Part shown: in pieces, positions 12,723 to 59,175 of the stretch
How the letters are laid out: each line of letters starts with the position of its first letter
Numbering within the stretch: position 1 is the first letter of the stretch
Source of the DNA: Syncephalis fuscata S228
Taxonomy: Eukaryota > Fungi > Zoopagomycota
Direction of reading: 5' to 3'
Assembly (NCBI GenBank): GCA_025786725.1
Contig: JAHLTZ010000004.1
Coordinates: 744,001 to 808,000 of the forward strand
Length of the DNA: 64,000 nucleotides
Position numbers and translations under genes: made by a program
Notes under the pieces: model-generated
The model's input: only the letters and a program-made list of their open reading frames with translations
What the model was told of the DNA's origin: nothing
Database searches by the model: none

Positions 12723-12849
12723 ATACATCTGTTAACAGGCTTGCTTGCTATTAACAATCATTTTTAAACTGGGGCATATCAATAACATTTTGATACAACA
12801 CAATTTTATTGATATAACTTTATTTTCTAAATAAATAAGCCAGCTATAT

Positions 12850-13170
12850 CTAAATTGATTTAAACAAAAAATGTAACATGTTATTTGATTTCTTTGAAAA
12901 ATTTAAGACTGATCATTGTTGTTGGCCATGTGTAGAAAGATTGATTGAATATCAATAGAAGCCATATATCGCGATTCCATGTTGTTCCACATTACTCCTG
13001 TTGCCTGTTTGTCATACTGCACACCAAACTGTTATATGATCTATTTCTTTCCTATCTTGTTTCTGTTTACTTGAACCACACTTGTATATTATAATAATCA
13101 TATTTAATAATTGCAATTATTTTATTCTTTTTATAATTGTAAACCATTTCAACAAAAATATTTAACAATT
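12850..13170 (-). mobile_element. Fanzor1/TnpB 3'-end remnant, subtype B
   Basis: Reverse strand reads CGTTWNRD(frameshift)MASIDIQSIFLHMANNND; near-copy of 45317-45630. Confidence 0.7.
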
Positions 13171-13628
13171 TAGTGTAAAAAGCCTTTTATTTTATTAAAT
13201 GTTATTTCAACTTCAACTAATACCGTAATGTGTATATTTAATTACATTATTGTATTGATAATTACACATGAATTGATTAGTGTTGGATGCAATATTATAC
13301 ATGCTATAGTAATGAGTGAATGTTTAATTGTATTTAAATGTTGAGGGGTGAAATGAATAAATAAAAATGTAAGAGTCAAAGCGCAATAGCTTCGAATACG
13401 TAAATACTCTGCATTTCACTTTTAAAGCCAACCGTCTATTTCCACAAGTATTTCTCTATGACGCAATCACTTGTTTCTACCAACACTCCCCAGTTACCAG
13501 TAACACTGGCGTTATTTTTTGTTAGTTTATTGATATTAACGGGGGCTCTACTGCCCTCTTTTCTGCCAACTGGCCTCTGCTTGAATTCTCGGCTTCCTTT
13601 CCTTTCGAAATTCTGTTCATTCTCTAAT

Positions 13629-15883
13629 ATGTGTCGTATTTCAACGCAAGATCCCAATTCATTTGCTAATGTCGAGCAAATTCAAACACGACATATCCAT
13701 CTAGAGCTTGAGGTTGATTTTAAGCGCCACACACTGATCGGGCAAGCCCGTCTTCAGTTAGAAGCCATTACTGATGACGTCACTAAAGTCGTCTTGGATA
13801 CTCGTGCTTTAAAAATTAGTGGCGTTCAGCTTGCTAATCACACGGGACCGATAGAGTACTCTTTGGCGTCAGCTCATCCAATTTACGGCTCGGCTCTTCA
13901 GGCAACTTTACCTAAAGCTTATACAGCCGGAGAAAAGCTTGAATTGATTGTTGCTTATGAAACTACAAAAGAAAGCGGTGCTTTACAATGGCTAGAACCA
14001 AGGTAAATCGCCCAAATTAACCATACATCTTATTTACTAAATATATGGATAGCCAAACAGTTGGAAAGCAACATCCTTATCTTTTTACTCAGTGTCAAGC
14101 GGTAAGTAAAGAATATAGGTATATAATAATTTGCCAATATTTAATAAACTACCAACACTAGATCCATGCTCGTAGTTTAGTACCAATCCAAGATTCGCCT
14201 TCTATTAAGCTTACCTACTCGGCAAGCATCCGTGTACCTAAACCACTCCGTGCCCTTATGAGTGCATTGTCGATTAGTCACTCACCCAGTGACGATGGCC
14301 ATTTAATTACATATCAATTTGAACAGCACACTAAGATGCCATCCTATTTAATTGCACTGGTTGTTGGAAATTTAGAAGGGCGAGAAGTAGGACCGCGCTC
14401 TACCGTCTGGACCGAGCCTGAAGTAATTGAGAAGGCAGCTTGGGAGTTTGCAGAGACGGAAAGCTTTATTGCCACTGGTGAGAAGTTACTTACGCCATAC
14501 GAATGGGCGCTACGACTTGCTTGTCTTGCCGGGCTCTTTCCCTTATGGTGGCATGGAAAATCCATGCCTTACATTTGTAACACCCACCTTGTTGGCAGGT
14601 GATCGATCTCTGGTAGATGTTGTAGCGCATGAAATTGCACATAGCTGGATGGGCAATTTGGTAACTACCAAGAATTGGGAACATTTCTGGCTGAACGAAG
14701 GCTGGACTGTATTTATTGAACGAAAGATTATTGGGCGTCTACGTGGCGAGCCTTCGCGCCAATTTTCAGCCATGCTTGGCTTTTCTTCACTACGTAAAGA
14801 TATTGAGCTTTTTGGCGTTACAAGTCCGCTTACAGCATTGACACCGAATCTTACCGGTATAGACCCGGATGATGCTTTTTCACGTGTGCCTTACGAAAAA
14901 GGATTTAATCTGCTGTATTACCTGGAACAGCTGTTGGGCGGCCCAGAGGTTTTTGAGCCATACATGAAGGCCCATGTACAGCAATTTGCTGGTAAATCCA
15001 TCACGACCGAGGAATGGAAGACATTTTTGTATACATTTATGGAACAACGTCACGGTGCAGAGAAAATTAAGACATTGGAAACTGTCAATTGGCATGCATG
15101 GCTTAAAGAGCCAGGAATGGTAAGTATTTAGTTATTTGGTTATTTTAAATTGTAATTAAAACTAACGATTCATCTTTACTGATATAACCATTATTAGCCA
15201 CCAGTGACAAATCAATTTGATCCTACATTGGCAAATGCATGCATCCGTCTTTGCGCAAGGTATATTGAAAGGGACAAATATATACCATTTCTAACATTGT
15301 CCACAGGTGGGAAGCAGCACGCAATTCAGATAAAACAGATTTCTCTGCCGATGATATAAAGACTTTAATCCTTATCAAAAAGGTAGATGATTTATTTGAT
15401 AACAGCAGCATCATCACCATCAGCTAATTGTTATACTATAATAGTCTTGTTCCTCCATGACTTTCGGAAAAGGAACCGCTATCCAAGGATAAACTTGATC
15501 TTATGGAATTTGTTTATAAATTTAATCAAGTTCAAAATTGTGAAATTCGCTTTTCTTGGCAAATGCTTTGTTTAAAGGCTGCATACCAGCCAATTTATTC
15601 GTTTGTAGTTGCATTTGTCAAGGAACAAGGACGGATGAAATACGTTCGTCCGCTATATCGGTAAATTCGAAAAGAGTGACATAGTTATTACAACTATAAC
15701 TGTTTTTTTTGTTTATTTAGTGCTCTCTACAAAGTAAATCCAACGTTGGCGCGTGATACGTTCACTTCTTTCCGTGATACCTATCATCCTATTGCAGCTC
15801 GTATGATTGCAAGTATTGATACATGCATAATTATTTAAAGCTAATTAGTTGTTTTTATTTAGGAAAAGGATATTATGGGCTAA
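13629..15883 (+). CDS. LAP2: Leukotriene A4 hydrolase / M1 leucyl aminopeptidase, multi-exon; apparent 1-bp indels near 14505 and 15360
   Basis: [37 protein letters not shown]...[28 protein letters not shown]-terminal [11 protein letters not shown]; an alternative in-frame ATG exists at 13458. Confidence 0.93.
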
Positions 15884-16189
15884 TATATTATAGTGGAGTA
15901 TCTACTAATAACAGCAATTAGCTCATTCAACTGTCACCCAATGAATAAAAGTTAACATTTTGCTGATATAATAATAATAATAATTTTAAGAGATTAATGC
16001 ACATTAAAACTCTAATGTATAATATTACATCCAACATTAATTGATTTATGTGTAATTATCAATACAATAATGTAATTAATTAGTTATCTTTATTATTGTT
16101 TTAATATATACATTGTATTATGATAATAATTGTTCAAAATGTCATTTATTTAGTCAGATTAACTATAGGAAAAGTGGTTGTTTAATAAA

Positions 16190-16510
16190 CAACTTTATAA
16201 TAATTATATTAATCTTGATCTTACATCACAAATATGCCCAACATGCAATAGTAGAATATTAGAAAATAGAAAAGATCATTTAGATGCAATAATCCATGCT
16301 GTACATAGATGTAACAACAACAAATGCGGAATAATATGGAATCGCAATCATATGGCTTATATTAATATTCAATCAATCTTTCTATGCATGGCCAACAACA
16401 ATAATAATTGGCCTTAAATGTTTTAATGAAATCAAATAGTATGTTACGTTATTTATTTAAATCAATTTATTAACAGTATTTTAATAAAAAAATAATATAA
16501 TTTATGATGC
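16190..16510 (+). mobile_element. Fanzor1/TnpB 3'-end remnant, subtype A
   Basis: TSQICPTC...HAVHRCNNNKCGIIWNRNHMAYINI is a CxxC...CxxxxC zinc finger plus a RuvC-III-like WNRDxxAxxNI motif (D changed to N); homologous to 45005-45316. Confidence 0.75.
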
Positions 16511-16890
16511 TTGTTAACATTTATCTTAATGCCCAAAATACAATGTGTTGCTTAGTTGTATTAATTTCATAATAAACTTATTCTTTATTGGTTATTAATT
16601 ATCACAGTTTAACTATAGTAAACTGAATAACTTGCATAACATTAAGTAAAAATAAGATAGAATTAGAAACTAGTATACTTTATTGATATGAATAGAGATA
16701 GCATTAAACAGTAAATATGGCTAGTAATAGAACCTGAATGCTTTGTAGTGTTTCATAATTAAAGCAGCGTATTAGTTTATACAATTACCCATACTTCACA
16801 ACTAACAAATGTTTGCTCGTCATATCTTCTTAATAGCTGTTTATTGCTGGTAGTTATTGCTAATACTTTATATATGTGCTATTATTGTAC
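16510..16890 (+). repeat. Diverged direct repeat, copy 1 (copy 2 at ~18795-19175)
   Basis: Shared blocks such as taacat.tatcttaatg..caaaatacaatgtg and tgaataacttgcat...agtaaaaataagata.a.tagaaac. Confidence 0.75.
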
Positions 16891-17190
16891 CCGTTCTACC
16901 ATATAATGTATTTATTTAACATGCTATTATAGCAATATAATCATAATATTGAAATGGTAACAGTAATGCTATTTTGAAAAGTAATATTTTTATTTTGAAT
17001 AGCTACGATTGTAGCAAAGATATTCTGCTATTGTTTATAATAGCTTGAAAATGCCGATAATGCGCTAATTTACAAATTTAAACGTGCAGCTATTATATCA
17101 ATGCTACAGCAGAATAAAACATATTAAAGCAGTTATTTAAGTATAGCTAGGTGGTCAAACACGATGGAGTGGGAATTAAAAAGTAACAGT

Positions 17191-18700
17191 AATATTATTT
17201 AGTAACAAAAAGATGACAATACTATGTATAACTCTGCATAGAATTGATTAAATTACATGATATTTTGCACAAATGTGTGTATAGAATATAGATAGCTATT
17301 GGTAAAGCATACCGTTATTATATTGTGTAATGGTATAATAGTAGTGATAATATGTTAATAAATATGCAAAGATAGCTGTTTTTTACAGATTATGACTTAT
17401 ATAAGTAAAATACAGCAAAATGATTGCTGGATTCGAGTTCTCCGTGCTTAGTTATCCAGATTGGTATGATTTATAGGGCAACGATTTTGCAAAAAATGTT
17501 AGTTAAAAAATGCAATTTACGTATTTTTAATTTACTTAGTAAACGTTGATAAAATCACGTATAACTTTACGTATAGTCAAGCAAATTGTATGATATTTTG
17601 CACAAGTGTGCACATAGCGTATAGGTAGCCATTGGTACAGTATACCGTTATTGCATTGTTTGATGATGCAGTAATTGTAATAGTACATTAATAAATGTAC
17701 AAAAATAACAGTTTTTTACAGATTATAACATATATAAGTAAAATACAGCAAAATGATTGCTGGATTCGAGTTCTCCGTGCTTAGTTATACAGATTGGTAT
17801 GATTTATAGGGCAATGATTTTTGCAACAAAAATAGGCCAAAAATGCCATTTATGTGTAAATCAGTTAACAAAAAATTAATATTATGTATATCTATGAATA
17901 AAATGCACAGTACATTGTATGTCTAATATTGACTTGCTATGTGCTATTTTGCACATAGAGTGGTTTGGACATTTGTTATGTCAAATTTTATTTAATATTA
18001 AATTTAAGCGTAAATTTAATTGTTTTGTTAACCGATTTACACATAAATTGCATTTTTACTAACATTTTTTGTAAAAATCATTGCCCCATAAATCATACCA
18101 ATCTGTATAACTAAGCACGGAGAACTCGAATCCAGCAATCATTTTGCTGTATTTTACTTATATATGTTATAATCTGTAAAAAACTGTTATTTTTGTACAT
18201 TTATTAATGTACTATTACAATTACTGCATCATCAAACAATGCAATAACGGTATACTGTACCAATGGCTACCTATACGCTATGTGCACACTTGTGCAAAAT
18301 ATCATACAATTTGCTTGACTATACGTAAAGTTATACGTGATTTTATCAACGTTTACTAAGTAATTAAAAATACGTAAATTGCATTTTTTAACTAACATTT
18401 TTTGCAAAATCGTTGCCCTATAAATCATACCAATCTGTATAACTAAGCACGGAGAACTCGAATCCAGCAATCATTTTGCTGTATTTTACTTATATAAGTC
18501 ATAATCTGTAAAAAACAGCTATCTTTGCATATTTATTAACATATTATCACTACATTATCCATTACACAATATAATAACGGTATGCTTTACCAATAGCTAT
18601 CTATATTCTATACACATTTGTGCAAAATATCATGTAATTTAATCAATTCTATGCAGAGTTATACATAGTATTGTCATCTTTTTGTTACTAAATAAATATT
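17191..18700. repeat. Large inverted repeat (arms ~17191-17823 and ~18071-18700), each arm made of about two copies of a 333-bp unit; foldback-like
   Basis: Arms are reverse complements with few differences; the core agtaaaatacagcaaaatgattgctggattcgagttctccgtgcttagttat occurs twice on each strand. Confidence 0.93.
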
Positions 18701-18794
18701 TGCTATATTTTTACAATTATGATTAAAAAATCTACAACTTAGATGGCCAAGCAACACTTTATTTTGGCGCTACCTTATAATGCTAGCCTTTGAT

Positions 18795-19175
18795 GTGTGC
18801 TAACATCTATCTTAATGTTCAAAATACAATGTGCTGATTGATTAGTATTACTTTGTGAATAAACTTAGTTTTATTGATCATTAGCCAGCACAGTTTGACT
18901 ATATAAAATGAATAACTTGCATTACAAGAAGTAAAAATAAGATAAACTAGAAACGACTATTCTCATTATTGATATTGAATAAAACCATCATTATAATAAA
19001 TATATTTAATAATAGAATTTAAATGCTTGTACTATATATCATTAATGCAGCACATCAGCTTATATAGCCGCTTATATGTTTACAAGCAACAAGTAGCCAC
19101 TCATTGTATCTTTTTAATAGATATTTGCTACTAGTACTCAGTGCTAATATCCGATATGTATATTACTACTGTAAC
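18795..19175 (+). repeat. Diverged direct repeat, copy 2 (of 16510-16890)
   Basis: Visual alignment with copy 1. Confidence 0.75.
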
Positions 19176-23669: not shown

Positions 23670-23849
23670 ATAAGCATGGTTTACTGCTGATTGTTAAACG
23701 AGATTTGGATCAAGTGAATAAATATCGCTATTTTACTTATTATGTGCTATGATCTGATGTGGGCAAGTAGAACCAAATAACCAAATAAATGGTTCATTTA
23801 GTTAATTGAGTTATATGTCTCCATTATTATTAAAGCTAGTATTAAATAA

Positions 23850-25240
23850 TTTATTAACAATTATATTGTGATTTATGCGTTAAATGACTAATATTTAATA
23901 ACGCCCAATCTATTGAACATGATGATGGGTGGTGAGTGACATCAATCATCAAATACTCATCATTGTAGATTCATTATCTAGTATGCATATATCATCACAG
24001 TATGTGTTATTACCATCTATACCCGTCACTTTACTTGATTAACATTAAAATCATATCTAACTGACATGATCTAGTTTATTTATAAATATTCTTAATAAAA
24101 CATAACTCCGTTCCTATTCATATCATTTGTTATATCAATATAATCAGTGAACAGACTAAATACGATATATCAATTTTATTAATAAAAAAGTTGGAATCAT
24201 ACGACAACGGCTATAAACAGCGTATAGTCAATATATAACAGAATGATAAACATTATACTAAATATACAGCATTGAACAAGATTAGCAATCTTAAAGTTAT
24301 TAAGCAGATGACTAATATTAGTTGAATTCTTAATAATAGTGCTATAACAAAATAAAAATAGAATTGGATGAGTAAGACTAGGCGAGTATAGAATGATATG
24401 GAATAAAATGAATATACGATGAAAATAATACAATAAGTAGTATTAAAACTATGGTGTATATAATGTAATGGGGGGAATGAGCATTTGTGCTAAGCATTTG
24501 CATTTTTAACAGCATTCGCGTAACTAACTACATATTCGTTTTATTGAACATGAAACTGAATGCTGAATAGTATCAATCATTAAAATATTTATTATTGTAT
24601 ATTTATTATTTAGTACACATATATCATCATTACAATACTATATTATTGCTGTTTACGCTGTTTTATTTCTAACCTTCTTTATTTGCATACTCATTAATAT
24701 ATCATGTTCCTATTTTGCTTAAACTTGTTATTAGCATGTATACTCATCATTCTGCCCGACTAGCATCAAAGCCATAGTCGACTCGCATTAACTGATTTGT
24801 CTACCAGACAGTTACACGATACATATATGCATGAGTAAGTAAACAAAATAATTTAAATTTATTAGTAATTAAACTAGCATTAAACAAATAACAGTTTCAA
24901 ATAACGTGTTGATATTATATAATAGTAATATATAAAATTATAAATATATGGTAAGAAATTATATAAAACAATGTCAAAGTTATAGTGCATATAACGTAAT
25001 GAACAGAATGAGTGGAGTATATAGGATTATATAAACAATAGAATGTGCCTAGTATATCATAGAATGATATAGATGAATAGAGGATATATGCATACTGGAT
25101 AATGAATTTATGATGATGAGTATTTGATGATTGATGTCGCTCACTATCCATTATCATGTTCAATAGATTGGGTGTTATTAATTGTAGTCATTGACCACCA
25201 AACAAACAGTAAATGTAATGATGTGCTGATTAAATAAAAC
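23850..25240. mobile_element. MITE-like non-coding element with inverted terminal copies of a dispersed repeat (23850-24000 on +, 24960-25240 on -)
   Basis: caatctattgaacatgat.atgg...gtgag.gacatcaatcatcaaatactcatcat occurs on opposite strands at the two ends; a degenerate internal copy lies at ~24535-24635. Confidence 0.6.
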
Positions 25241-33975: not shown

Positions 33976-35003
33976 TTAGAGATCTACCTTTACGAGGGCT
34001 TTGATGTTAGCCTTGACGATTGCAAGAATAGCAATGCGGATATCGGCAAGAACCTTGACATCGACCTTAACAAGGGCGTTGACCTTAACGGCAACGTCGG
34101 CCTTGATGCTAGCTCTGATGTCAGCGAGAACCTTGATAGCAGCATCGATCTTGACAAGAACGTCGGCATCGACCTTAACTCCAGCATTGATGCGGGCATT
34201 AACTTTAGCCTTGAGATCGACAAGAACCTTGACGGCAGCATCAATGTGAAGATCGATAAGAGCATGAATATCGGCAATAACACGGGCTTTGATGTCTACG
34301 TTAACATCAGCCTTGACAATGATCTTGGCAATAGCATTGAGGAGGACATCGATCTTAGCACTGATGTTGGCCACAATGTTGGCCCGAATGTCAGCAATAA
34401 TCTTGGCAATAACCTTAAGGTCGACATCAACATCGACATCAAGCTTAATTCCGGCACCAATCTTAACATCAACGTCGGCTTTGATGTCAGCAATGACTTT
34501 AAGGTCAACATCAGCGCCAACGCCGACACCAACGCCGACACCGACACCGACACCAACGCCGATATCAATGCCACCACCGTGGCCGCCGTCATGACCACCG
34601 TCGTGGCCGCCATCATGACCACCATCGTGACCGCCATCATGACCACCATCGTGACCGCCATCATGACCACCTCGTGCCCCATCGTGCCGCCATCATGACC
34701 ACCGTCGTGGCCGCCATCATGACCGCCATCGTGACCACCGTCGTGGCCGCCATCGTGACCACCGTCGTGGCCGCCATCATGACCGCCATCATGACCACCG
34801 TCGTGGCCGCCATTATGACCACCGTCGTGGCCGCCATTATGACCACCATCGTGGCCGCCATTATGACCACCACTACCGTAGTCAGAGCCTTTTGAGGGAA
34901 CTGTTCCAGGCTTTGTATTGTAGCCGTAGCTTTCAGTGGTGGCGATGCCTTGACCAGCGATGGCCAACAAGAAAAGAGCCGAAGCGACAAAAGCGAATCT
35001 CAT
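33976..35003 (-). CDS. Secreted protein with GGH(D/N) repeats and a C-terminal Val/Ala/Ile/Asp/Lys-rich domain; apparent frameshift at ~34670-34690
   Basis: Signal peptide MRFAFVASALFLLAIAGQG; 12-bp repeats; downstream frame ...GIDIGVGVGV...ADIKADVDVK...KALVKVDL*; TATAAAG at ~35171-35177 on the minus strand. Confidence 0.8.
34575..34875. repeat. Coding 12-bp tandem repeat (GGHD/GGHN)
   Basis: Iterations of catgaccaccgtcgtggccgccat-type units. Confidence 0.9.
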
Positions 35004-35843: not shown

Positions 35844-36548
35844 TGGATCAGTAGCCCAGTCTTTTTGTCGTAGTTCTGTCGACGCAACTCCGCCTGGCCG
35901 CATGGCTATCATGCAGCCGGTTTAAACCAATGAACACGGATGAACGTCATGCAGGCAATAATCCTGCTTTTTCTTAGAATGAGCAATATTTGTAAAGAAT
36001 CCCGAATATGGTTCCATCATTGTTGAGAAACTGATTGATCATTCCTGGCCCCACATGCGGATTTATGGCGGATGAACTTTTGACAAGCCGTTTTTTTTGT
36101 TACGCGACTCAACATTAAACAAGCGTCATCAATTGAATGCACATGTGGCAGCAGGGACTTTTGAAGTTTCTTGGCATCATACTTTAGTAAAATTCAAGCA
36201 AAATGCAGGAGATAATACTAGAATATTTGTCATCTTTTAAGAATATCGTCCAATTGGACATCACATGTCCTTTAGCTACCTGACAAAACTGATCGCCTAT
36301 CGGTTGCTTATATCACGTGATCCTGTTAAATGTACAATAAGCAGCCGCTCAACAATCGATTCCATTACAATTTAAATAATAATATGAGTAAAAATTGTAT
36401 TGTTTAGTAAATAAATATATAAAACATTAAATACAACGTATAATTGCTAATACAAAAGCTACATGTATAATAACAAATATTTTAAAATTACTATATTACT
36501 AAACGAGTTGACAGTAAAAACGTATAATGGCCTCCATCTAGCAAATTC

Positions 36549-37684
36549 TTAAACTGCTTGCGTAGCTCTGCCATTATCAGACACTCGTCCAAGTGCGTTA
36601 ACATTATTGAGTACGCGTACACCCGATGCGTCGACGTTAATAAGAGAGCTTCCATTATTATTATTGGTACCATTGTCACCAAGATTGTTGCCACCAGGAT
36701 TATTGCCATTGCCATTATTATTGCCACCAGGATTATTGCCATTATTGCCATTATTGCCATTTTGTCCATTTGTCCATTTGTATTTTGTGACAATTGACCA
36801 CTAGACACGCTTCCCAAAGCATTTACATTGTTCAATAGTCGAATTCCCTCAGCATTGATATTAATTAAACCGCTGCCATTATTTGTAGATCCAGGATTAT
36901 TATTACCATTATTTCCGCCACCGTTGTTGTTTAATCCATCAGGATTGCCGCCATTTGTGTTTTGTGATAGCTGACCATTGGATACACTACCAAGAGCATT
37001 TACATTATTGAGAAGACGAATCCCTTCACCATTAATATTGATTAAACCATTATTGCCGTTGCCGTTCCCATTGCCTCCATTGCCGCCAGAATTATTGCCA
37101 TTGCCGCCAGGATTATTGCCATTGCCGCCAGGATTATTGCCATTGCCGCCAGGATTATTGCCATTGCCACCAGGATTATTGCCATTGCCGCCAGGATTAT
37201 TGCCATTGCCGCCAGGATTATTGCCATTGCCGCCAGGATTATTGCCATTGCCGCCAGGATTATTGCCATTGCCGCCAGGATTATTGCCATTGCCACCAGG
37301 ATTATTGCCATTGCCACCAGGATTATTGCCATTGCCGCCAGGATTATTGCCATTGCCGCCAGGATTATTGCCATTGCCGCCAGGATTATTGCCATTGCCA
37401 CCAGGATTATTGCCATTGCCACCAGGATTATTGCCATTGCCACCAGGATTATTGCCATTGCCACCAGGATTGTTTATACCTCCTGGTATACCAGTGTCTG
37501 GATTGTTTGGAATAATTGGAACGCCTGGTGTAGGTACACCCCAAATGGGTGGACCACCATGAACAAATCCATTGGAAGAACCTGGGTGATTTCTTAAATA
37601 ATGGCGATATTTTTGTGGTGCTGCATCGCTTAAATAAGTTAAAAGTATGGCCGCCACAACCAGTTGAGTTAAAAAAGACTTCAT
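36549..37684 (-). CDS. Secreted Gly/Asn-rich repeat protein: (PGGNGNN)n plus three LIN(I/V)xxxG(I/V)R(L/V)LNNVNALG modules; apparent frameshift at ~36770
   Basis: Signal peptide MKSFLTQLVVAAILLTYLSDA; about 18 21-bp repeats (37090-37470); the third module SLINVDASGVRVLNNVNALGRVS is recovered in the shifted frame. Confidence 0.8.
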
Positions 37685-38812
37685 GGTAACTTCTAGCGGT
37701 AGATTGGACTTGAAATTAAACAAGCTGAAGCACAATAGCAAGGATATCTAATGATCAAGTACAAGCAAAAAAGTAGTGATGTAATGCTACTACATGGTTG
37801 TTGTATTTTATATTTTATATTGAACGCCAACTAGCATTAGATGTGCTGTTTTGCAAGTTATAGAAACTCCCGAAACACAAAACATCTGCCCAAGCAAAGA
37901 TTATTCTCCTTTATCTGCGTCGACGATCTTTGGCGGTCATTCGGCACTGCTACCTCAATGTTGATTGCCATAAGGCGTATTCAAACTGACCGTAGATCCA
38001 TGCGTGAGGTGGCTCAAGTATGCTTGCTGCAACTGACACAGCAGTTGCAATTGTATTTGGTCAAATTTATAGATTGTTTTGAGGTCTGATCAGCCGCATT
38101 CAATTACAAATTGGACATTTAATTACAAATAAAATAAAATATCAGCCGTGCATATTAAGCAGCTTATTTAAGTTAAAGCAAATTATATAATTTAACAATG
38201 TTCTCTTAAAACAGCTCTGTGATTGACAAGATGCATTGCAACTCTATATTCGAACATCAGTAAAAATATAATTTTTTATTAGTTTATTATCACTGGTTTA
38301 TGATTAAAGCTACTTTTAAAAAACCAGTTGTTATTTTTTACGTCAAGTAACTATAGCATTTTAATGAATTAAATAACAATTTTAAAGCATATAAATGTGC
38401 GTAAAATAAAAATATTAAAATTTACTTTTTAATGTTAAATTCTTTTGAATAGTTATTTTTCAATATAGATAAAGAGTAATGCTGGAAACATTATACAAAG
38501 TATTTATTTATGGTGCATAACCGTGGAATGGACAGATATTCGTATTACTAAGTATGGTAATACTAATATTTTAAATAATTTAATCACACTTTTACAAGTT
38601 ATTAATGCACTGCAATAATTTGCGGATTACATCGTAATTTATTCTGATGTAAGCATTTTAATGCTGGTTTCAAAAACCGAATTATGCTGCGAAAAACCCG
38701 GTAGTAATTAGGTGACCGAATTTAATTAGAAGGGTACAATTTGCAGAAATAGTTGCACGGATTAACAGCGTGGCTGATGTTGGACAGTATTTATACGTTG
38801 GACAAACGGGAT

Positions 38813-40620
38813 TTAAAGGTCGACAGCAGCGTTGATGTCAAGGTCGATGAGATTACCTTCTTTTTCGTGCTTGGGCTTATCCTTGTCACCACCGCCATAC
38901 TTGCCACCGGTGCTTGGTTTGTCACCGCCACCATACTTGCCGCCGGTGCTTGGCTTGTCACCACCGCCTGGAGCACCAGTGGGGCATGGAGCCTTGTGCT
39001 CAGTGTCTGGCTTGTTACCGCCGGATGGAGTGCTACCATAAGCTGGCTTGTGGTCAGTGTCTGGCTTGTGACCGCCGGAGGAGTGCTACCGTAAGCTGGC
39101 TTGTGGTCACCGCCGGATGGAGTGCTACCGTAAGCTGGCTTGTGTCAGTGTCTGGCTTGTTACCGCCGGATGGAGTGCTACCATAAGCTGGCTTGTGGTC
39201 AGTGTCTGGCTTGTTACCGCCGGATGGAGTGCTACCGTAAGCTGGCTTGTGATCAGTGTCTGGCTTGTTACCGCCGGATGGAGTGCTACCATAAGCTGGC
39301 TTGTGATCAGTGTCTGGCTTGTTACCGCCGGATGGAGTGCTACCATAAGCTGGCTTGTGGTCAGTGTCTGGCTTGTTACCGCCAGTGGTTGGGCATGGTG
39401 CCTTTTGCTCGGTATCTGGCTTGTTACCACCGGATGGAGTGCTACCATAAGCTGGCTTGTGGTCAGTGTCTGGCTTGTTACCGCCGGATGGAGTGCTACC
39501 ATAAGCTGGCTTGTGGTCAGTGTCTGGCTTGTTACCGCCGGATGGAGTGCTACCGTAAGCTGGCTTGTGGTCAGTGTCTGGCTTGTTACCGCCGGATGGA
39601 GTGCTACCATAAGCTGGCTTGTGTTCAGTATCTGGCTTGTTACCGCCAGTGGTTGGGCATGGTGCCTTTTGCTCGGTATCTGGCTTGTTACCACCGGATG
39701 GAGCGCCACTGTAGGCAGTTGAAGGTGGAGCTACATTATAATGACGGCGATACTTCTTGTGGTGTTCGTTATCGCCACCTGGAGCTGGACCTGATGGTGG
39801 GCATGGAGCTTTGCCATTTGAGCTGTCTTCCTTGCCACCAGCGGGTGTGGGCGTGTAGGCTGGCTTGGTTGGTGGAGTGGTAGTCTCACCACCTGGAGCT
39901 GGACCTGATGGTGGGCATGGTGCCTTACCATTTGAGCTGTCTTCCTTGCCACCAGCGGGTGTGGATGTGTAGGCTGGCTTGGTTGGTGGAGTGGTAGTCT
40001 CACCAGCGGGTGTGGGCGTGTAGGCTGGCTTGGTTGGTGGAGTGGTAGTCTCGCCACCTGGAGCTGGACCTGATGGTGGGCATGGAGCCTTGCCATTTGA
40101 GCTGTCTTCCTTGCCACCAGCGGGTGTGGGCGTGTAGGCTGGCTTGGTTGGTGGAGTGGTAGTCTCACCACCTGGAGCTGGACCTGATGGTGGGCATGGT
40201 GCCTTACCATTTGAGCTGTCTTCCTTGCCACCAGCGGGTGTGGATGTGTAGGCTGGCTTGGTTGGTGGAGTGGTAGTCTCACCAGCAGGTGTGGGCGTGT
40301 AGGCTGGCATGGTTGGTGGAGTGGTAGTCTCACCGCCTGGAGCTGGGCCTGCTGGTGGGCATGGTGCCTTACCATTTGAGCTGTCTTCCTTGCCACCATA
40401 ACTGGCAGGTGGAGTTGCATAGTTATTAGTTCCAGCTGGAGCAGTTGTTTCTATGTAATACAAAAATAAAAATGGTAAGTTATCTATTATCAAATCTAAC
40501 ATTGAAATCGACCATCGATCTCTAGTCATTGTGCGGCTACTTACGATAGTGGGGCATAGCCGAGCTGACGCTCAAGGCGGCCAAAAGGAAAAGAGTTGAG
40601 GCAATAACACTGGACTTCAT
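38813..40620 (-). CDS. Secreted Pro/Thr/Gly/Lys/Tyr-rich repeat protein (cell wall or coat-like); 2 exons, with indels in the repeats near 39060-39150
   Basis: Exon 1 MKSSVIASTLFLLAALSVSSAMPHY then a GTAAGT intron; repeats GGKEDSSNGKAPCPPSGPAPGGETTTPPTKPAYTPTPA and PSGGNKPDTDHKPAYGST; ends GNLIDLDINAAVDL*. Confidence 0.8.
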
Positions 40621-42099: not shown

Positions 42100-44861
42100 C
42101 TAATCTTGTAAACCAAAGGCACCCACTCGTCGCATGCCCACCGCGCCTCCTTCACGAATTTGCTCGTCCTCTAGCAAGTCACCCATACAATGCCAAGGGT
42201 CACGAGCACCGCCCCATCGTAATATGTCGTTACGCAATCGTTCACCCGCCACTCGACTTAATGGATCCGCGGCAAACCATTGTCGCCAGGTTTGACCGGC
42301 CAACGAGCGACCAAGTAAATAGGCATAATAGCCGGCACCATAGCTGATAAGATGGGTAAAGTCCATCTGCCAGCGAGCACCAGGTACATGCGCAAATAAA
42401 CTGTAGAGTGAATTGTTTTCAGCTTCAGCAAGTAAACGGTCAGATAGCTGGTCGCTAGGCGTTGACTTCCATCTTACGCCGTGATATAATTGATCAACAA
42501 ATGCCAATAGTATTTGATGATGTCTATCTAGCGCAGCCAAATAGGTACGTTGGTCGAGTTGGCGCTGCAGCACACTTGTAGGCAAATGCTCGCCTGTTTG
42601 GTAGTGGCGTGCAAAAAGCCTCAACACACGCGGGTCCGATGCAAATTGTTCAAATAAAATAGAGGGAAATTCGACAAAATCAGTAGCACATCGTGTACCT
42701 AATACAACATAATACAGCATAATGATATTAAATCGTTATTAGTGTATATATTAATATTTTTAATCTATTAATCTATATACTCAACTTACCTGCTACGTTA
42801 TGGAATTCGGTCTGTCCTAGCATAGCTATAACGATTAAGGTCGTTAATTAAATACAAATACTTTAATATACACTTACAATGAACTGCATGTCCCATTTCA
42901 TGAAATAGCGTTTCTAATTCATAAAGCGATAATCCAACCGATTCTCGCGCAAATCCACACACCAAGACTACAACAGGTAATTGACGCATTTGATCACCGC
43001 GTTGTATTGTCGTCTCGGCCGACGTTGGAATGGTTCTTAGCTCATCCGGCCATATACGACGTGCACATTGAACGGTATAGTGTGCAGCACCACTTGGCTT
43101 GCCCGGCCGATCAGCCAAGTCACAGTAAATGGTGCCAATTCGTCCCTGTACATCGTCAATAACTGCTAGTTTACGCACACTAGAATGCCATAATTCGCCT
43201 GATGCTGTGGCGGCCGGTTCTAAACGTATGCCATACAAGTTATTTAAAAGACGTGAGATCCCTTGTATGCATCGACCAATGGATGTATATGCCTGAAACG
43301 AAGCGGTTGCCGATTCAGTAGATACATTATAGTAACTATTACTATTACTGTCGGCAGAATGGCTTTTTGATAAATTTTCTTCTTGTTGTAGTTTTTGTCG
43401 TGCATACTGTTGTCTAACACGATAAGCATAAAAGTCGCGATCCCATGCATTTAATTCTGTAGAATTATGTCCAAGAAATTGCTGCTTTTCTTGTCTAAGT
43501 AGCTGTAAGTCTCTCTGTGCTTGAGGTAGATGCTGTAATGCTAATCCATCAAGAAATGATCGTACACTTTCTACATATCCATACTAGCTAGTTAGTAATA
43601 AATTAAAGTTAACAAGCAATAAGTTACCTGAAGAGCTGGCCATTTTACCGTCAAGTGACATATCAGCAAAGCTATTCCATCCAACAAGTTTGGCCAAAGC
43701 TGCTCGATGCAATAATAGCTCGTCAAGCACTTTTACCTGATCCGTTTGAATAGTATGCATTGCACGATACATCTTTTCGCGAACTGATTCGTCTTGGTAA
43801 AATCGTAGTACCGTACGTGCCGACACATCGCTAGTCGGTAACCGGACTTTATCGCCGTGACGAGTTGCTCCTCTTACAGGTGTATCACAATAACGTGTAA
43901 AATTCGACTGGTCTACCTGAATATACGGAATAGTCACTGTTTTTGTGTCATCGCGATTTATAAATTGACGTGATAAGGCAAGAATCTCATCTGATAAAGC
44001 AACAAATTGACGTCGATGTGTAGACGGTAAATGAATACCTGATCGTTCAAAATCACGTAAAAATAGCTGGGCTACTCGACGTTCTTCCTCGCCTAGTTTA
44101 TTGGCCACATCACGATTGGTTAATAATCGGCGTAGTGTCTAATAAAGCATATAGATAAATATCAATATATACATCAATCCAAAGTTACGTCTGTTCGTTA
44201 TTTGTCATTTAATAAAATGGTACATTATTTAAATTACCTCATAAAGGCCAGTATCAGTATTAAGTGTATTCATAAACGAAAAAAGTCGTTCATAGGCTCT
44301 ATGAGCTTCTTCAACGTATCGACGGTCTGGATGAACATGTCGAACAAACTCAGCAAGATCTAAGACGCTACAAAGCGCGTCTGATAGTTCGTCAAGTCGG
44401 CGTACTGCGTCTTTTAATGCCACATCTGTATCAGCCGATCGAATGATCGCTACAAGTCGACGCGAACGTGCTAAGCTTTCCTCGGTTAGCTGTCGAAAAC
44501 CATCAGGTGTAGCAAGTCGATCATCGCCAAATAAACCAGTGCTTAGAAAGCCGGTCACATTCGATGAAGTGGCGTTAGCAGTTGGCTCGCAATCAAACAG
44601 CTCCCGTAGATCATGATCCAATTCCAGCTCTACTGAAGATCTACCTGTATTAGATAGTGACTTTAGTGCTATTTTTTCTGAAGAAGTAGAAGGGGTTGGT
44701 GTGGAATGCGTAGTCTTTGTAGAGTGTGTTCGTGTATTAAAATGCTTTGTTTTAAAGGGAATCCGCGTCAATAATAAAAACCATGGCCTTATTGCTACTG
44801 TGTGGGATCGTAAAAAGCACGACTTTGTCGGCCTATTAAGCCGTAAAAACAGCAGCGACAT
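42100..44861 (-). CDS. OCT1: Mitochondrial intermediate peptidase (M3 family), multi-exon
   Basis: Basic presequence; LDELSDALCSVLDLAEFVRHVHPD, LNTDTGLY, FERSGIHL, TLFHEMGHAVH (HExxH), GTRCATDFVEFPSILFE, HLISYGAGYYAYL. Confidence 0.95.
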
Positions 44862-45004
44862 GTCAATGACGCTTGCAATTAAAAAGAATAAAACAAGTAC
44901 AAATAAAAATGTAATAAAAATAATTATAACAAATTTCGCTTTAAAGACTCAAAATAGGGGTGCAAGGTAAAATTCAAGCACTCTAAGTCGCACTGTTATG
45001 CACA

Positions 45005-45316
45005 ACATAGTTATATTACTTACTATTAAATGTTATTAATAAATCGATTTAAATAAACAATGTAACATACCATTTAATTTCTTTGAAATATCTGAGGTCG
45101 ATCATTGTTGTTTTTGGCTATATGTAGAAAAACTGATCGAATATTAATAGAAGCCATATGATTGCGATTCCATGTCATTCCACGTTTGTTGTTATTGCAT
45201 CTATGTACAGCATGGATTATTGCATCTAAATGATCTTTTCTATTTTCTAATATTCTACTGTTGCATTTTGGGCATATTTTTGATGTAAACTCAAGATTAA
45301 TATAATTATTAAACAT
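45005..45316 (-). mobile_element. Fanzor1/TnpB 3'-end remnant, subtype A
   Basis: LEFTSKICPKC...HAVHRCNNNKRGMTWNRNHMASINIRSVF...DRPQIFQRN*. Confidence 0.78.
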
Positions 45317-45630
45317 CTTTGTTGAAATGGTTTACAATTATAAAAAAAATAAAAGAATTGCAATTATTAAATATGATTGTTACAATATACAAATGTGGCT
45401 CAAGTAAACAGAAACAAAATAGAAAAGAAATAGATCATATAACAGTTTGGTGTGCAGTATGACAAACAGGCAACAGAGTAATGTGGAACAACATGGAATC
45501 GCGATTATATGGCTTCTATTACTATTCAATCAATCTTTCTACACATGGCCAACAACAACAATAATAATTGGCCTTAAATGTTCCAAAGAAATCAAATAAC
45601 ATGTTACATTCTTTTGTTTAAATGTTTAAA
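45317..45630 (+). mobile_element. Fanzor1/TnpB 3'-end remnant, subtype B, back-to-back with subtype A
   Basis: tgtggaacaacatggaatcgcgattatatggcttct translates to CGTTWNRDYMASITIQSIFLHMANN, with the RuvC-III Asp intact. Confidence 0.75.
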
Positions 45631-45884
45631 TAGCAGCTACTGATACAATGCTCTGTTATATTTAATTCTACTTTATGGAATGATAATGTTATTATATTAC
45701 ATTGATATTTATTGTGAATGATCATTTAAACACAATTAATCCAATCAACTCGTCAACTATTTAAATCGTTACAATTGATTGTGTAAAAAGATTTACTGCC
45801 CCTGGGGGATGAAAGTAAATATTGACCAATTACTGTTTATTCAATAAATCTTAAATAAATGGTTTATTCGTATAATAGAGAAGA

Positions 45885-47622
45885 TTAAACAGAAATGGTC
45901 TTAAAAATGTTAAAGCCGGATGCAGCTGTGCTTACAACACAACCAGGTATTTGTGGATGCCAGTGTAGTTCCTTAATATCCGATTGGCCTTGATGAATAA
46001 ACAATAGCTGAGGTGGCACTGGTACCGTAGTACCTTGTCCATCTGTGGCCATGGCCGCTTCTTCCTCAGGGTCGGGCTCCACCGATAGATCCCATAGTGT
46101 TAGTTGGTCATCAGCACCTGATACGGCAAGCACCGATTCTTCTTGCGGATTCCACTCAATTGACGTAATGGGTGCATGATGCCATTTAAAGCTAGCCACT
46201 GGAGCTGGTGCACCGTGGCCATTAGCGCTACCGGCTGCTGGAGATAGTGCACGCATATCCCACACGCTAAATATACCATCATCCGAACCAGATGCTAGTA
46301 AGTAGGAGACTTGTCGATTCCATGAAATTACATTAACATCGGCAGTATGCGCTTCAAATCCAATCGCTTCTTTTGTACGCTGGGCACGTGTATCCCAGAT
46401 GCGAATAGTGCGATCCGAAGAACACGAAGCAAATACCGTCTTTTCTGTAGGCGACCACTGTAAATCCTCCACAGAACCTTGATGACCTTGAAAGGCGACC
46501 GAATCAGTTTGAAAACCGGCATTATTTGCTGAAGTAGCAAAAATCTTGCCATGGCCATCGCCTGTTAATAGTCTTAGATTTTATTACAATTATCGACAAT
46601 GTTAATATACACGCACTATAACTATATTACTGACTTTACTAGCCACTTTTATAACTTACTTTCCTGCTACCGTAGTAGACCAGTCCATGGCATAACCTTC
46701 GGCAGTGTGACAGGCAACCGTATGAAGCGGACCGTTATTCTTTGGCGGTGCCACGCCCACTTGTGATAATGATGCCACCTGCGATTGAATATGCCAGATA
46801 TGAACCTTGCCTGTATCGGCCCAGGTTGCGGCCATTGCTTCTGGACCTTGCGGCATAACACGGACACGATTAACACCGCCATGATGTGGAATAGAACGAT
46901 GCTCTAAAATAGGATCCTCGTCTAAATCATCTTCCTCTTCTTCGTTATCTGTATCATCTAGTAGAAGTAAACATTAAATAATAGTAATTAATTAGCATAG
47001 ATGCATATAACTATTTTACTACATTATATTATTACCTTCATCGTCATGGCTTGTACGATGAAGTTGACTCATTTTCATGATCATCAACTCGTTATTCTTT
47101 GGCTTATCTGCTTGAGTACCTGCCACCAAATAGGTAGTATGCGGATATTTACTACGATCTTCACCCAAATTATCCTTAAAAATATCAAAGCTAAGACAAG
47201 GCCAGCGTACATTCATACTGTGCAGCATCTCGTAGGCCGAGTTATCGACCTCCAATACTTGGTCCTTTTCTAACTGTTGACCCGGCAAGTACACTCTAAC
47301 TTCCTGTTCCGTTTCATCCACCTCCATATCTATTAATTGATTGGTTTAATTAATTACCGTATATTAATTGCTACTGCTATTTACCATTATCATTCGCTTG
47401 GCCTTCGCCTTCTTCTTCTATAGCATCATGCTCAGTCTCTCCATCAATGATGTCCTCTCCGCTATCGGATTCCAACTCGTCCTCCCATACATCTTCAAAT
47501 TCGCCCATTTCCTCCAAATTGGATGGTAGCTGTTTGCCATTGGTCGAACGATCGTCAAGTACCCGCGACTTGGCCTGGCGTCCCTGCTCATCAGCAGTGG
47601 TAAATTCACGCTTTGTCGACAT
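45885..47622 (-). CDS. RRB1: Ribosome assembly WD40 protein Rrb1/GRWD1, multi-exon
   Basis: DNSAYEMLHSMNVRWPCLSFD, LVAGTQAD, HHGGVNRVR, VEDLQWSPTE, VPPQLLFIHQGQ, GFNIFKTISV. Confidence 0.95.
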
Positions 47623-57858: not shown

Positions 57859-58455
57859 ATGAAGTTCTCCAAGGTTCTCCTCGCTTTTGCCGTCCTTGCC
57901 CTCGCTGCCAGTAGCGCCGTTGCCGCACCTATCGATGCCAATGTCTTGGCCGATGTAAACGTCAATGCCGACGTTCTCGTCAACGCTCTTGTCGACGTCA
58001 AGGCCGATGTCCATGTTAAGCTTCTTGCCCTTGTTTTGGCCGATATCAAAGCCAAGGTCAATGTCAATGCCCACGTCAATGTTGATGTCGTTGCCAGAGT
58101 TGTTGTCAATGCTATTGTCAACCTCAATGCCAGAGTTCTCGCCAAGGTTGACGTTCACGTCGGTGCTCTTCTTGACGTCAAGGTTGCTGCCGACATCAGG
58201 GCCCACATTATTGCCGATCTCGACATCTGGGTTGATGTCCTTGTCCGTGCTTTGATTAAGGCTGACGTTAAGGTTAATGCTAACATCAAGGCTGACATCA
58301 AGGCCGCCGTTATTGCCAAGCTTGATGTGATCATCAAGGCTCTCGTCGACGCTAAGGTCCGCATCACCGCCGACATCAAGGCTAAGATCACTGCGCAAAT
58401 CAAGGCTGACATCCATGCTGATGTTGATGCCATCATTGCTGCCCACATTCACTAA
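57859..58455 (+). CDS. Secreted Val/Ala/Ile/Asp/Lys-rich protein, paralog of the C-terminal domain of 33976-35003
   Basis: Signal peptide MKFSKVLLAFAVLALAASSAVA; ADIKAKV-type units; strong C/T-ending codon bias; TATAAAA at ~57694. Confidence 0.85.
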   Translation: MKFSKVLLAFAVLALAASSAVAAPIDANVLADVNVNADVLVNALVDVKADVHVKLLALVLADIKAKVNVNAHVNVDVVARVVVNAIVNLNARVLAKVDVHVGALLDVKVAADIRAHIIADLDIWVDVLVRALIKADVKVNANIKADIKAAVIAKLDVIIKALVDAKVRITADIKAKITAQIKADIHADVDAIIAAHIH

Positions 58456-58739: not shown

Positions 58740-59175
58740 GCTTATTAGTCATTCAATGTGATTTTGGTGTTTAAATGACTACAAGTAGAATATTAATATA
58801 TTTAAACTACCATTCTTTCTATTGAACGTAATGAGAAGTGGTGAATGGCATTAGTAATTGGAATACTTATCATCGTAGTTTTATAATGCAATGAGGGGAA
58901 TGAGTAGAGTGTGTTGGTACATGTAAACAATAGAATATGTCTAGTATATTGTAGAACGATATATATTAGTGTGGAATAGAATGGAAATAATATAAGTAAA
59001 TGGTGGGTATGTGTACTGAATATACGCATGCTGGATAATGAATCTATGATGATGAGTATTTGATGGCTAATGTCACTCACCGCCCATCATCATGTTCAAT
59101 AGATTGATGTCATTAAATTTAATTATTTAACCATCAAAGCACAATAAATGTGATGATGTGATGATTAATAAAGTT
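58740..59175 (-). mobile_element. Further copy of the 23.9/25.1-kb repeat family, with partial inverted ends (MITE-like)
   Basis: Reverse strand caatctattgaacatgatgatgggcggtgagtgacattagccatcaaatactcatcatcat; extended similarity to 24960-25240. Confidence 0.65.

What the first reader, a model, noticed from the sequence alone, without database searches (positions are those of the whole stretch)
45005..45630. Back-to-back Fanzor1 C-terminal fragments: a candidate non-autonomous dual omega-RNA cassette
Seen: all four remnants retain only the last ~70-80 codons (E-x-TSxxCPxC...C....WNR(D/N)xMAxINI...RP.IFQR in subtype A, more degenerate in B) plus a shared downstream tail, AAAT(C/T)AAAT....TGTTAC.TT...TTTAAAT, before the flanks diverge. 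Established: TnpB and Fanzor nucleases use an omega-RNA encoded at or overlapping the 3' end of the gene and element, and the guide comes from flanking DNA. Inference: repeated retention of exactly this segment from two subfamilies could reflect guide-RNA-producing loci that act in trans with a full-length Fanzor, or Fanzor ends recycled as the terminal inverted repeats of a MITE. This copy lies ~150 bp upstream of the OCT1 start.
Basis: partly seen in the sequence, partly recalled or inferred. Interest (0 to 1): 0.8.

Follow-up and report, generated by a model that had tools for sequence, protein, structure and literature searches.

The report
Decayed Fanzor transposon ends, fused back-to-back
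These are two broken tail-pieces of a fungal transposon gene (Fanzor, a CRISPR-like nuclease) joined back to back in a mould-parasitising fungus; they stop short of the part that makes the guide RNA, so they are most likely ordinary fossils, although their intact relatives hint that the guide RNA in this family is made by splicing.

Summary
The remnants are real: two divergent Fanzor1 C-terminal fragments (A1 45077-45310 minus; B1 45304-45633 plus) in Syncephalis fuscata, between OCT1 and a WD40 gene. Their closest named kin are Mucorales Fanzor1.

The dual omega-RNA reading is not supported. In six intact or near-intact relatives the conserved, covarying scaffold (about 55 nt; stem with ATAACA loop, then GGTAAG; like PpFz1 omega-RNA) lies downstream of the retained segment. 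A covariance model that recovers held-out relatives finds no scaffold at any remnant. Only A1 keeps the first stem-loop (44986-45009), without the 3' half. A1 and A2 diverge neutrally and lack both catalytic residues.

The four copies are probably one A/B pair seen twice: at 12.85-16.5 kb the same arms flank an M1 peptidase gene, and the 45 kb junction equals an 8-nt repeat bounding that 3 kb, suggesting a microhomology deletion.

Side finding: in relatives, the scaffold ends in a splice-donor motif and the transposon ends in AG 76-309 nt later, suggesting a spliced guide RNA (untested).

The parts
45077..45310 (-). A1: last 78 codons of a Mucorales-type Fanzor1 (zinc finger/TNB and RuvC-III); open frame, but the RuvC-II Glu is out of register and the RuvC-III Asp is Asn; stop at 45074-45076
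45023..45070 (-).
   Evidence: intron status is inference
44986..45009 (-). Degenerate first stem-loop of the clade's omega-RNA scaffold (ATAACA loop, 7 of 8 pairs, three G-U); the GGTAAG half is missing
   Evidence: best hit of the stem-loop PWM in 69.8 kb on both strands, 14.2 bits vs 17-26 for held-out relatives
44922..44956 (+). Segment X: also follows the fifth copy beyond the window, but there in the opposite orientation relative to the Fanzor tail
   Evidence: 86% over 35 nt
45304..45311 (.). A/B junction: 8-nt overlap that occurs twice (one mismatch) at 13163-13170 and 16198-16205
45304..45479 (+). B1 upstream part: about 60 very degenerate codons with stops; 93% identical to B2, about 50% to type A
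45480..45598 (+). B1 core: last ~40 codons (CGTTWNRD onward) with a premature stop; 77-85% identical to the other three copies
45599..45633 (+). B1 tail: intron-like stretch with the donor changed to AC; homology ends here, with no scaffold downstream
12851..13170 (-). B2: second B-type remnant, left arm of the inverted pair around the M1 peptidase gene
16198..16500 (+). A2: second A-type remnant with three in-frame stops, right arm of that pair
13235..13302 (.). Left copy of a 68-nt inner inverted repeat (91%), 241 nt from the shared core
16015..16082 (.). Right copy of the 68-nt inner inverted repeat, 240 nt from the shared core
13458..15830 (+). Host M1 peptidase gene (leukotriene A4 hydrolase-like, from my own knowledge) between the two arms; 3' end approximate
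   Evidence: Pfam PF17900 and PF01433
44229..44861 (-). First exon of OCT1 (mitochondrial intermediate peptidase); left neighbour
   Evidence: peptidase M3 hits in the following exons
45885..46472 (-). Last exon of a WD40 gene (RRB1/GRWD1-like, from my own knowledge); right neighbour

Best explanation
The locus is inert transposon debris. A Mucorales-type Fanzor1 DNA transposon once multiplied in the Syncephalis fuscata lineage (shown by homology). What survives here is the end of its gene plus the last small intron (coding part shown; intron inferred). Two such pieces, one of them a chimera with a more diverged upstream part, came to flank an M1 peptidase gene as a long inverted repeat (shown at 12.85-16.5 kb). 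A copy of that composite lost its 3,027-nt interior by deletion between 8-nt direct repeats, which fused the arms back to back (inferred). The outer arms were later reshuffled with other dispersed copies (inferred from their mosaic identities). It makes no active nuclease and most likely no loadable omega-RNA: B lacks the scaffold entirely, and A1 has only its first stem-loop.
For: Fanzor1 homology. Both A copies have RN for the RuvC-III RD and no Glu in register; A2 and both B copies have stops. A1 vs A2: 8.5 synonymous changes, against 8.1 +/- 2.2 expected under neutrality. The scaffold in six relatives lies 124-192 nt past the WNRD codon and covaries (score 0.317; 1 of 500 shuffles). A model lacking L003 and L013 finds them at E 1.8e-8 and 5e-5, but nothing at the remnants up to E 10. 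The retained 3' ends have no unusual fold. The orientation switch at 45304-45311 coincides with the 8-mer duplicated around the 3 kb. Inner A and inner B are equally diverged from their 13/16 kb twins, 94% and 93%.
Against: Only 85.7 kb of the genome could be read, so copy number, an intact partner and empty sites are unknown. A1 keeps an unbroken frame and a foldable first stem-loop. The Syncephalis subfamily may have had a different 3' scaffold half; the sequence after A1's stem-loop folds into a hairpin, and the 79-nt stretch folds at -15 kcal/mol (no shuffle control). A deletion between 8-nt repeats and an insertion with an 8-nt duplication leave the same pattern. How the composite was copied to 45 kb is not shown.
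Confidence: 0.68

Rival explanations
1. Dual omega-RNA cassette: both arms are transcribed outward and supply guides in trans to an intact Fanzor elsewhere, like the ghost loci of Spizellomyces.
For: Ghost loci with working omega-RNA scaffolds are published (PMC10432273). A1 keeps the first stem-loop, which PMC11423790 reports as the conserved protein-binding part.
Against: No full scaffold at any remnant, and none of it in B1 or B2. Divergence is neutral. No Syncephalis Fanzor protein appeared among the named hits, though unannotated copies are not excluded. Published ghosts keep the scaffold and drop the ORF; these copies do the reverse.
Confidence: 0.04
2. Only the A1 arm gives a functional omega-RNA, with a subfamily-specific 3' half (stem-loop at 44986-45009 plus the hairpin that follows).
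For: The stem-loop is the top PWM hit in 69.8 kb and sits at the expected distance (173 nt past the W codon); a hairpin follows it.
Against: Segment X is inverted relative to the fifth copy. The stem has three G-U pairs and a changed TATRTC motif. There is no GGTAAG and no TIR-like end downstream.
Confidence: 0.06
3. The B/A unit is a genuine MITE or foldback element that uses Fanzor coding ends as new inverted termini; the 13-16 kb locus is the same element carrying or having received the peptidase gene with an 8-nt duplication.
For: The arms form an inverted repeat in both loci. The 8-mer pattern fits a duplication. The left and right arms at 13-16 kb are colinear in length, 241 vs 240 nt between two patches of 91% and 84% identity. 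This region has other foldback repeats.
Against: An insertion would have had to hit the exact A/B orientation switch, roughly a 1-2% target. The outer ends differ between the two loci and are less alike than the inner parts. The native TIR profile scores at most 12 bits near the remnants vs 22-33 for real ends.
Confidence: 0.2
4. The inverted arrangement is an assembly or amplification chimera.
For: Several inverted repeats occur in the window.
Against: The arms are only 77% identical and differ by many scattered substitutions; chimeras give near-identical arms. The contig is 919 kb.
Confidence: 0.02

Closest known systems
Mucoromycota Fanzor1 (Thamnidium elegans INT48_003713 family, Mucor circinelloides HMPREF1544_02846, Rhizomucor pusillus, Parasitella parasitica; the class of the MCi/ROr/PBl elements of Bao and Jurka, PMC3627910)
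   Same: Zinc finger followed by WNRDHMAS.NIRS.F..MA.N...RP..F.R; 42-50% identity to A1 over 78 residues; an intron-like stretch right after the last conserved Arg in several.
   Different: The window has only 5'-truncated, catalytically broken ends, no TIR and no full scaffold. The host is a zoopagomycete, whereas all named kin are Mucoromycota.
Ghost Spu-1 loci of Spizellomyces punctatus (PMC10432273)
   Same: Non-autonomous, multi-copy derivatives of a fungal Fanzor1 element.
   Different: Ghosts keep both 30-nt IRs and the 75-nt scaffold and lack the ORF. These remnants keep ORF ends and lack the IRs and most of the scaffold.
PpFz1 omega-RNA (PMC11423790, Table S3)
   Same: The relatives' motif has the same layout: a TTATCC-like start, a 7-8 bp first stem with a 6-nt loop, then GGTAAG.
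   Different: Loop and stem sequences differ. PpFz1 RNA recovered from yeast runs on past GGTAAG unspliced. The window keeps only the first stem, in A1.
IStrons (TnpB plus group I intron; bioRxiv 10.1101/2023.11.20.567912, review PMC13565253)
   Same: Relevant only to the side finding: a splice site coincides with the transposon's right end.
   Different: In IStrons self-splicing removes the whole element and competes with guide production. In the relatives here a spliceosomal intron would remove only the right TIR and create the guide junction (inferred).

Membership tests
Fanzor1 (gene origin) | C4 zinc finger/TNB followed by the RuvC-III WNRD region and RP..F.R | tested here: met
   PF07282 above cut-off for A1; clade profile 19-89 bits on all four
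Fanzor1 (gene origin) | Closest relatives are eukaryotic Fanzor1, not bacterial TnpB | tested here: met
   named best hits are Mucorales proteins, with kin up to 863-912 aa; PDB hits led by GtFz1 and PpFz1
Active Fanzor nuclease | RuvC-II Glu just before the zinc finger and RuvC-III Asp | tested here: not met
   A copies read NLEFTS / NLDLTS and WNRN; B copies keep RD but have stops and frameshifts
Active Fanzor nuclease | Full-length ORF with WED, REC and RuvC-I | tested here: not met
   a full-length profile finds nothing else in 85.7 kb
Ghost / trans-acting omega-RNA locus | Complete scaffold of the cognate clade | tested here: not met
   no model hit at any remnant; held-out relatives are recovered; only the first stem-loop at A1
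Ghost / trans-acting omega-RNA locus | Scaffold conserved more than neighbouring sequence, with covariation across copies | tested here: not met
   retained 3' core 77-85% vs 93-94% upstream; fold z-scores not significant
Ghost / trans-acting omega-RNA locus | Discrete expressed small RNA crossing the element end | not testable with these tools
   no RNA data
Ghost / trans-acting omega-RNA locus | Intact cognate Fanzor in the same genome | tested here: inconclusive
   no Syncephalis protein among named hits; unannotated or clustered copies are not excluded and the whole assembly was not searchable
MITE / foldback element | Terminal inverted repeats with the same outer ends in several copies | tested here: inconclusive
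   inverted arms present but outer ends differ, and only two loci were seen
MITE / foldback element | Target-site duplication outside the arms | tested here: inconclusive
   none apparent on inspection of the flanks; outer boundaries are uncertain
TA-duplicating TIR transposon of the relatives | Ends TA|CTGT ... ACAG|TA flanking the Fanzor gene | tested here: not met
   present in L003, L004, L014; near the remnants at most 12 bits vs 22-33 (the 12-bit site at 12816-12839 is a weak hint only)

The most novel reading that the evidence does not exclude
The remnants are fossils of a Fanzor1 transposon family whose omega-RNA is made by spliceosomal splicing. In six relatives the scaffold ends at an invariant G|GTAAG(T/C) donor motif. 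A G-poor, pyrimidine-rich stretch of 82-315 nt then runs through the right TIR to an AG at the element's end. Splicing would drop the TIR and join the scaffold to the target-site TA and the flanking guide. The Syncephalis copies may in addition have come from the Mucorales hosts it parasitises. The probability given is for the spliced guide RNA.
Probability: 0.4. Interest if true: 0.75.

Novelty: new member of a known kind. Interest (0 to 1): 0.33.

Why it matters
As found, little: it adds decayed Fanzor1 pieces in a zoopagomycete mycoparasite and shows that the proposed dual guide cassette lacks its scaffold. Two by-products matter more. First, a defined ~55-nt candidate omega-RNA scaffold with covariation for a Mucorales Fanzor1 clade. 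Second, a testable answer to how a Fanzor inside a long-TIR transposon could get a flank-derived guide: by splicing out the TIR. If true, guides inferred from unspliced RNA in yeast may be misassigned for such elements. My literature searches found no report of this, which is not proof of absence. The match to Mucorales-only kin also makes host-to-parasite transfer worth testing.

Tried and rejected
Word search with A1 alone: no candidates. The large protein search was therefore used once.

Viral contigs: no relatives. Metagenome scan: only three distant loci. Rfam: nothing at 44800-45900.

Folding the retained 3' ends: not better than shuffles.

Bacterial promoter scan: background level and not applicable to a fungus.

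Homology of the middle 240 nt of the two arms at 13-16 kb: not significant (z 0.85), so it is unresolved whether they are ancient homologues.

AG depletion in the putative second intron of the relatives: not beyond low G content in most (P 0.04-0.7), so that argument was dropped; the case rests on the donor motif and the terminal AG.

Purifying selection on the peptide: rejected. Assembly chimera: rejected.

Left out by rule: no joined (spliced) protein model of OCT1, the WD40 gene or the M1 peptidase was searched; exons were scanned separately. Orthologous loci in sister species (empty sites, synteny) could therefore not be fetched. Frames with stops were read only in scripts, with X at the stops. 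No human contig was met.

Full report
SOURCE AND SETTING. The window lies on contig JAHLTZ010000004.1 of GCA_025786725.1. A neighbouring protein is named Syncephalis fuscata, a zoopagomycete that parasitises Mucorales (own knowledge). The feature sits in the 1-kb AT-rich gap between the start of OCT1 (44861, minus; peptidase M3) and the stop of a WD40 gene (45885, minus).

OBSERVATION. Self-comparison finds four related pieces: A1 45028-45311(-), B1 45304-45630(+), A2 16198-16481(+), B2 12851-13170(-). A1 translates as 78 uninterrupted codons and passes the PF07282 cut-off. The word search was blank, so the exhaustive search was run. It returned 70 relatives, and the named best ones are Mucorales Fanzor1 proteins; later searches added only Mucoromycota names. 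A profile of these scores A1 89, A2 88, B1 46 and B2 19 bits and picks GtFz1 and PpFz1 first in the PDB. So the Fanzor1 call is right. B is clear only for its last ~40 codons; upstream it matches a full-length profile at E 0.04. A fifth copy 5 kb beyond the window (L001:544-632) has the tail but no coding sequence.

THE PROTEIN IS DEAD. Fanzor has its RuvC-II Glu six residues before the zinc finger (PMC13565253). Both A copies lack it in register and have Asn for the RuvC-III Asp. A2 has three stops, and both B copies have stops and frameshifts. A1 and A2 differ at 29 sites, of which 8.5 are synonymous, against 8.1 +/- 2.2 expected for neutral change with the same transition bias.

WHERE THE OMEGA-RNA LIES IN THIS CLADE. 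I fetched loci of intact or near-intact relatives. Six of them (L003, L004, L005, L013, L014, L015) share a non-coding motif 124-192 nt past the WNRD codon: TATRTC, an 8-bp stem closing an invariant ATAACA loop, a linker, then GGTAAG. Five of the eight pairs show two-sided changes, and the covariation score is reached by 1 of 500 shuffles (six related sequences, so indicative rather than a probability). The layout matches the measured PpFz1 omega-RNA (PMC11423790 Table S3). I take it as the clade's scaffold; this is inference.

A covariance model finds no hit at any remnant up to E 10. A model built without L003 and L013 still finds them at E 1.8e-8 and 5e-5, so the blank is informative. A PWM of the first stem-loop has its best hit in 69.8 kb at 44986-45009(-), just past A1 (14.2 bits; held-out relatives 17-26); the GGTAAG half is absent next to every copy.

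WHAT THE SHARED TAIL IS. In A1 the tail begins GTATGT at 45070 and reaches its first AG at 45023, 48 nt later. This resembles the short introns seen in the peptidase gene. Relatives L002, L003, L013 and L014 have a GT donor motif at the same point after the last conserved Arg. Removing that stretch leaves 12-34 nt before the stem-loop, as in the intron-less relatives; A1 gives 13 nt (read). The tail is therefore most likely the gene's last intron. In B the donor is AC and homology stops near the acceptor. It is not the element end. In L003, L004 and L014 the true ends are TA|CTGT ... A(C/A)AG|TA, and in L013 a 148-nt TIR, all well beyond the scaffold. No such end scores convincingly near the remnants.

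WHY BACK TO BACK. Read on the minus strand, the 45 kb unit is B2's sequence followed directly by A2's, overlapping by 8 nt. At 12.85-16.5 kb the same arms stand 3,027 nt apart around an M1 peptidase gene and a 68-nt inner inverted repeat, and the 8-mer occurs on both sides. Inner A and inner B are equally diverged from their twins (94% and 93%), so they were duplicated as one unit. A deletion between the 8-mers explains why the junction is exactly the orientation switch; an insertion would have had to hit that spot by chance. The outer cores are mosaic (A2 shares a premature stop and its context with B1), which points to exchange among dispersed copies. How the composite was copied is not shown, and a MITE-like history remains the main rival (0.2).

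COMPARISON. It descends from Fanzor1 but fails the tests for an active nuclease and for a ghost omega-RNA locus. Fanzor1 in fungal TIR elements is known from PMC3627910.

SIDE FINDING IN RELATIVES. In all six relatives the scaffold ends in G|GTAAG followed by T or C, a canonical fungal 5' splice site (own knowledge). Two more distant loci (L010, L016) and PpFz1 have GTAAG at a similar place. A stretch of 82-315 nt with 2-11% G follows. It ends in AG at the right end of the element where that end is defined by a matching left TIR (L003, L004, L014, and L013 where the AG includes the next base); L005 matches L014 there. Without splicing the guide could not come from the flank; with it, scaffold, TA and flank would be joined. 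Against this: PpFz1 RNA from yeast is unspliced and active, AG depletion is not significant beyond low G, and there are no RNA data. I put it at 0.4 and found no report of it.

LIMITS. Only 85.7 kb of this genome was readable. Spliced host proteins were not joined or searched as wholes, so sister-species loci were out of reach. An intact Fanzor elsewhere in S. fuscata is neither shown nor excluded.

VERDICT. Observation partly confirmed; Fanzor1 origin supported; dual omega-RNA cassette not supported. Best reading: neutrally decaying Fanzor1 gene ends fused by a deletion (0.68). New member of a known kind. Interest 0.33, most of it owed to the spliced-guide lead in the relatives.

Noticed in passing
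L003:6303-6662, L004:6960-7175, L005:2340-2486, L013:7131-7373, L014:3988-4112, L015:4345-4533: Conserved candidate omega-RNA scaffold ending in a splice-donor motif, followed by a G-poor stretch that ends in AG at the transposon's right end; possible spliced guide RNA.
   Followed up: partly
L003:1275-6662, L004:4256-7175, L014:422-4112, L013:2657-7373: Complete-looking Fanzor1 TIR elements of about 2.9-5.4 kb with TA at both ends; L013 (Mucor circinelloides) has a 148-nt TIR with internal repeats.
   Followed up: partly
L001:500-632 (about 5.2 kb past the window end): Fifth copy with tail, degenerate stem-loop and segment X in the same sense, no coding part, directly after a copy of another repeat; the most ghost-like copy seen, but no model hit.
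   Followed up: partly
window 12851-16500: An apparently intact M1 peptidase gene enclosed by long, patchily similar inverted arms; two patches (91% and 84%) are separated by dissimilar blocks of almost equal length (241 and 240 nt).
   Followed up: partly
window 17189-18700: Foldback element: arms 98-99% identical, each made of two ~333-nt units about 80% alike; flanked by a 360-nt direct repeat (16505-16865 and 18791-19149, 74%).
   Followed up: no
window 23848-23996, 24542-24629, 25080-25238, 58789-59172: Another dispersed AT-rich repeat of 90-160 nt, including an inverted pair 1.1 kb apart; a further copy abuts the fifth Fanzor tail.
   Followed up: no
window 44979-44990: A 12-nt stretch beside A1's stem-loop is identical to the 3' part of the published GtFz1 omega-RNA; probably chance.
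   Followed up: no
window 12816-12839 (minus): Weak match (12 bits, rank 4 in 85.7 kb) to the relatives' TIR end just past B2's tail.
   Followed up: partly
whole finding: All named relatives are Mucoromycota while the host is a Mucorales parasite from another phylum; possible host-to-parasite transposon transfer, not tested with a tree.
   Followed up: no
window 34296-35003, 36491-37741, 38750-40529, 57859-58455: Cluster of genes for small repetitive proteins, several with signal-peptide-like starts (12-, 21-, 51- and 54-nt repeat units; two with Val/Ile/Asp/Ala-rich repeats).
   Followed up: no
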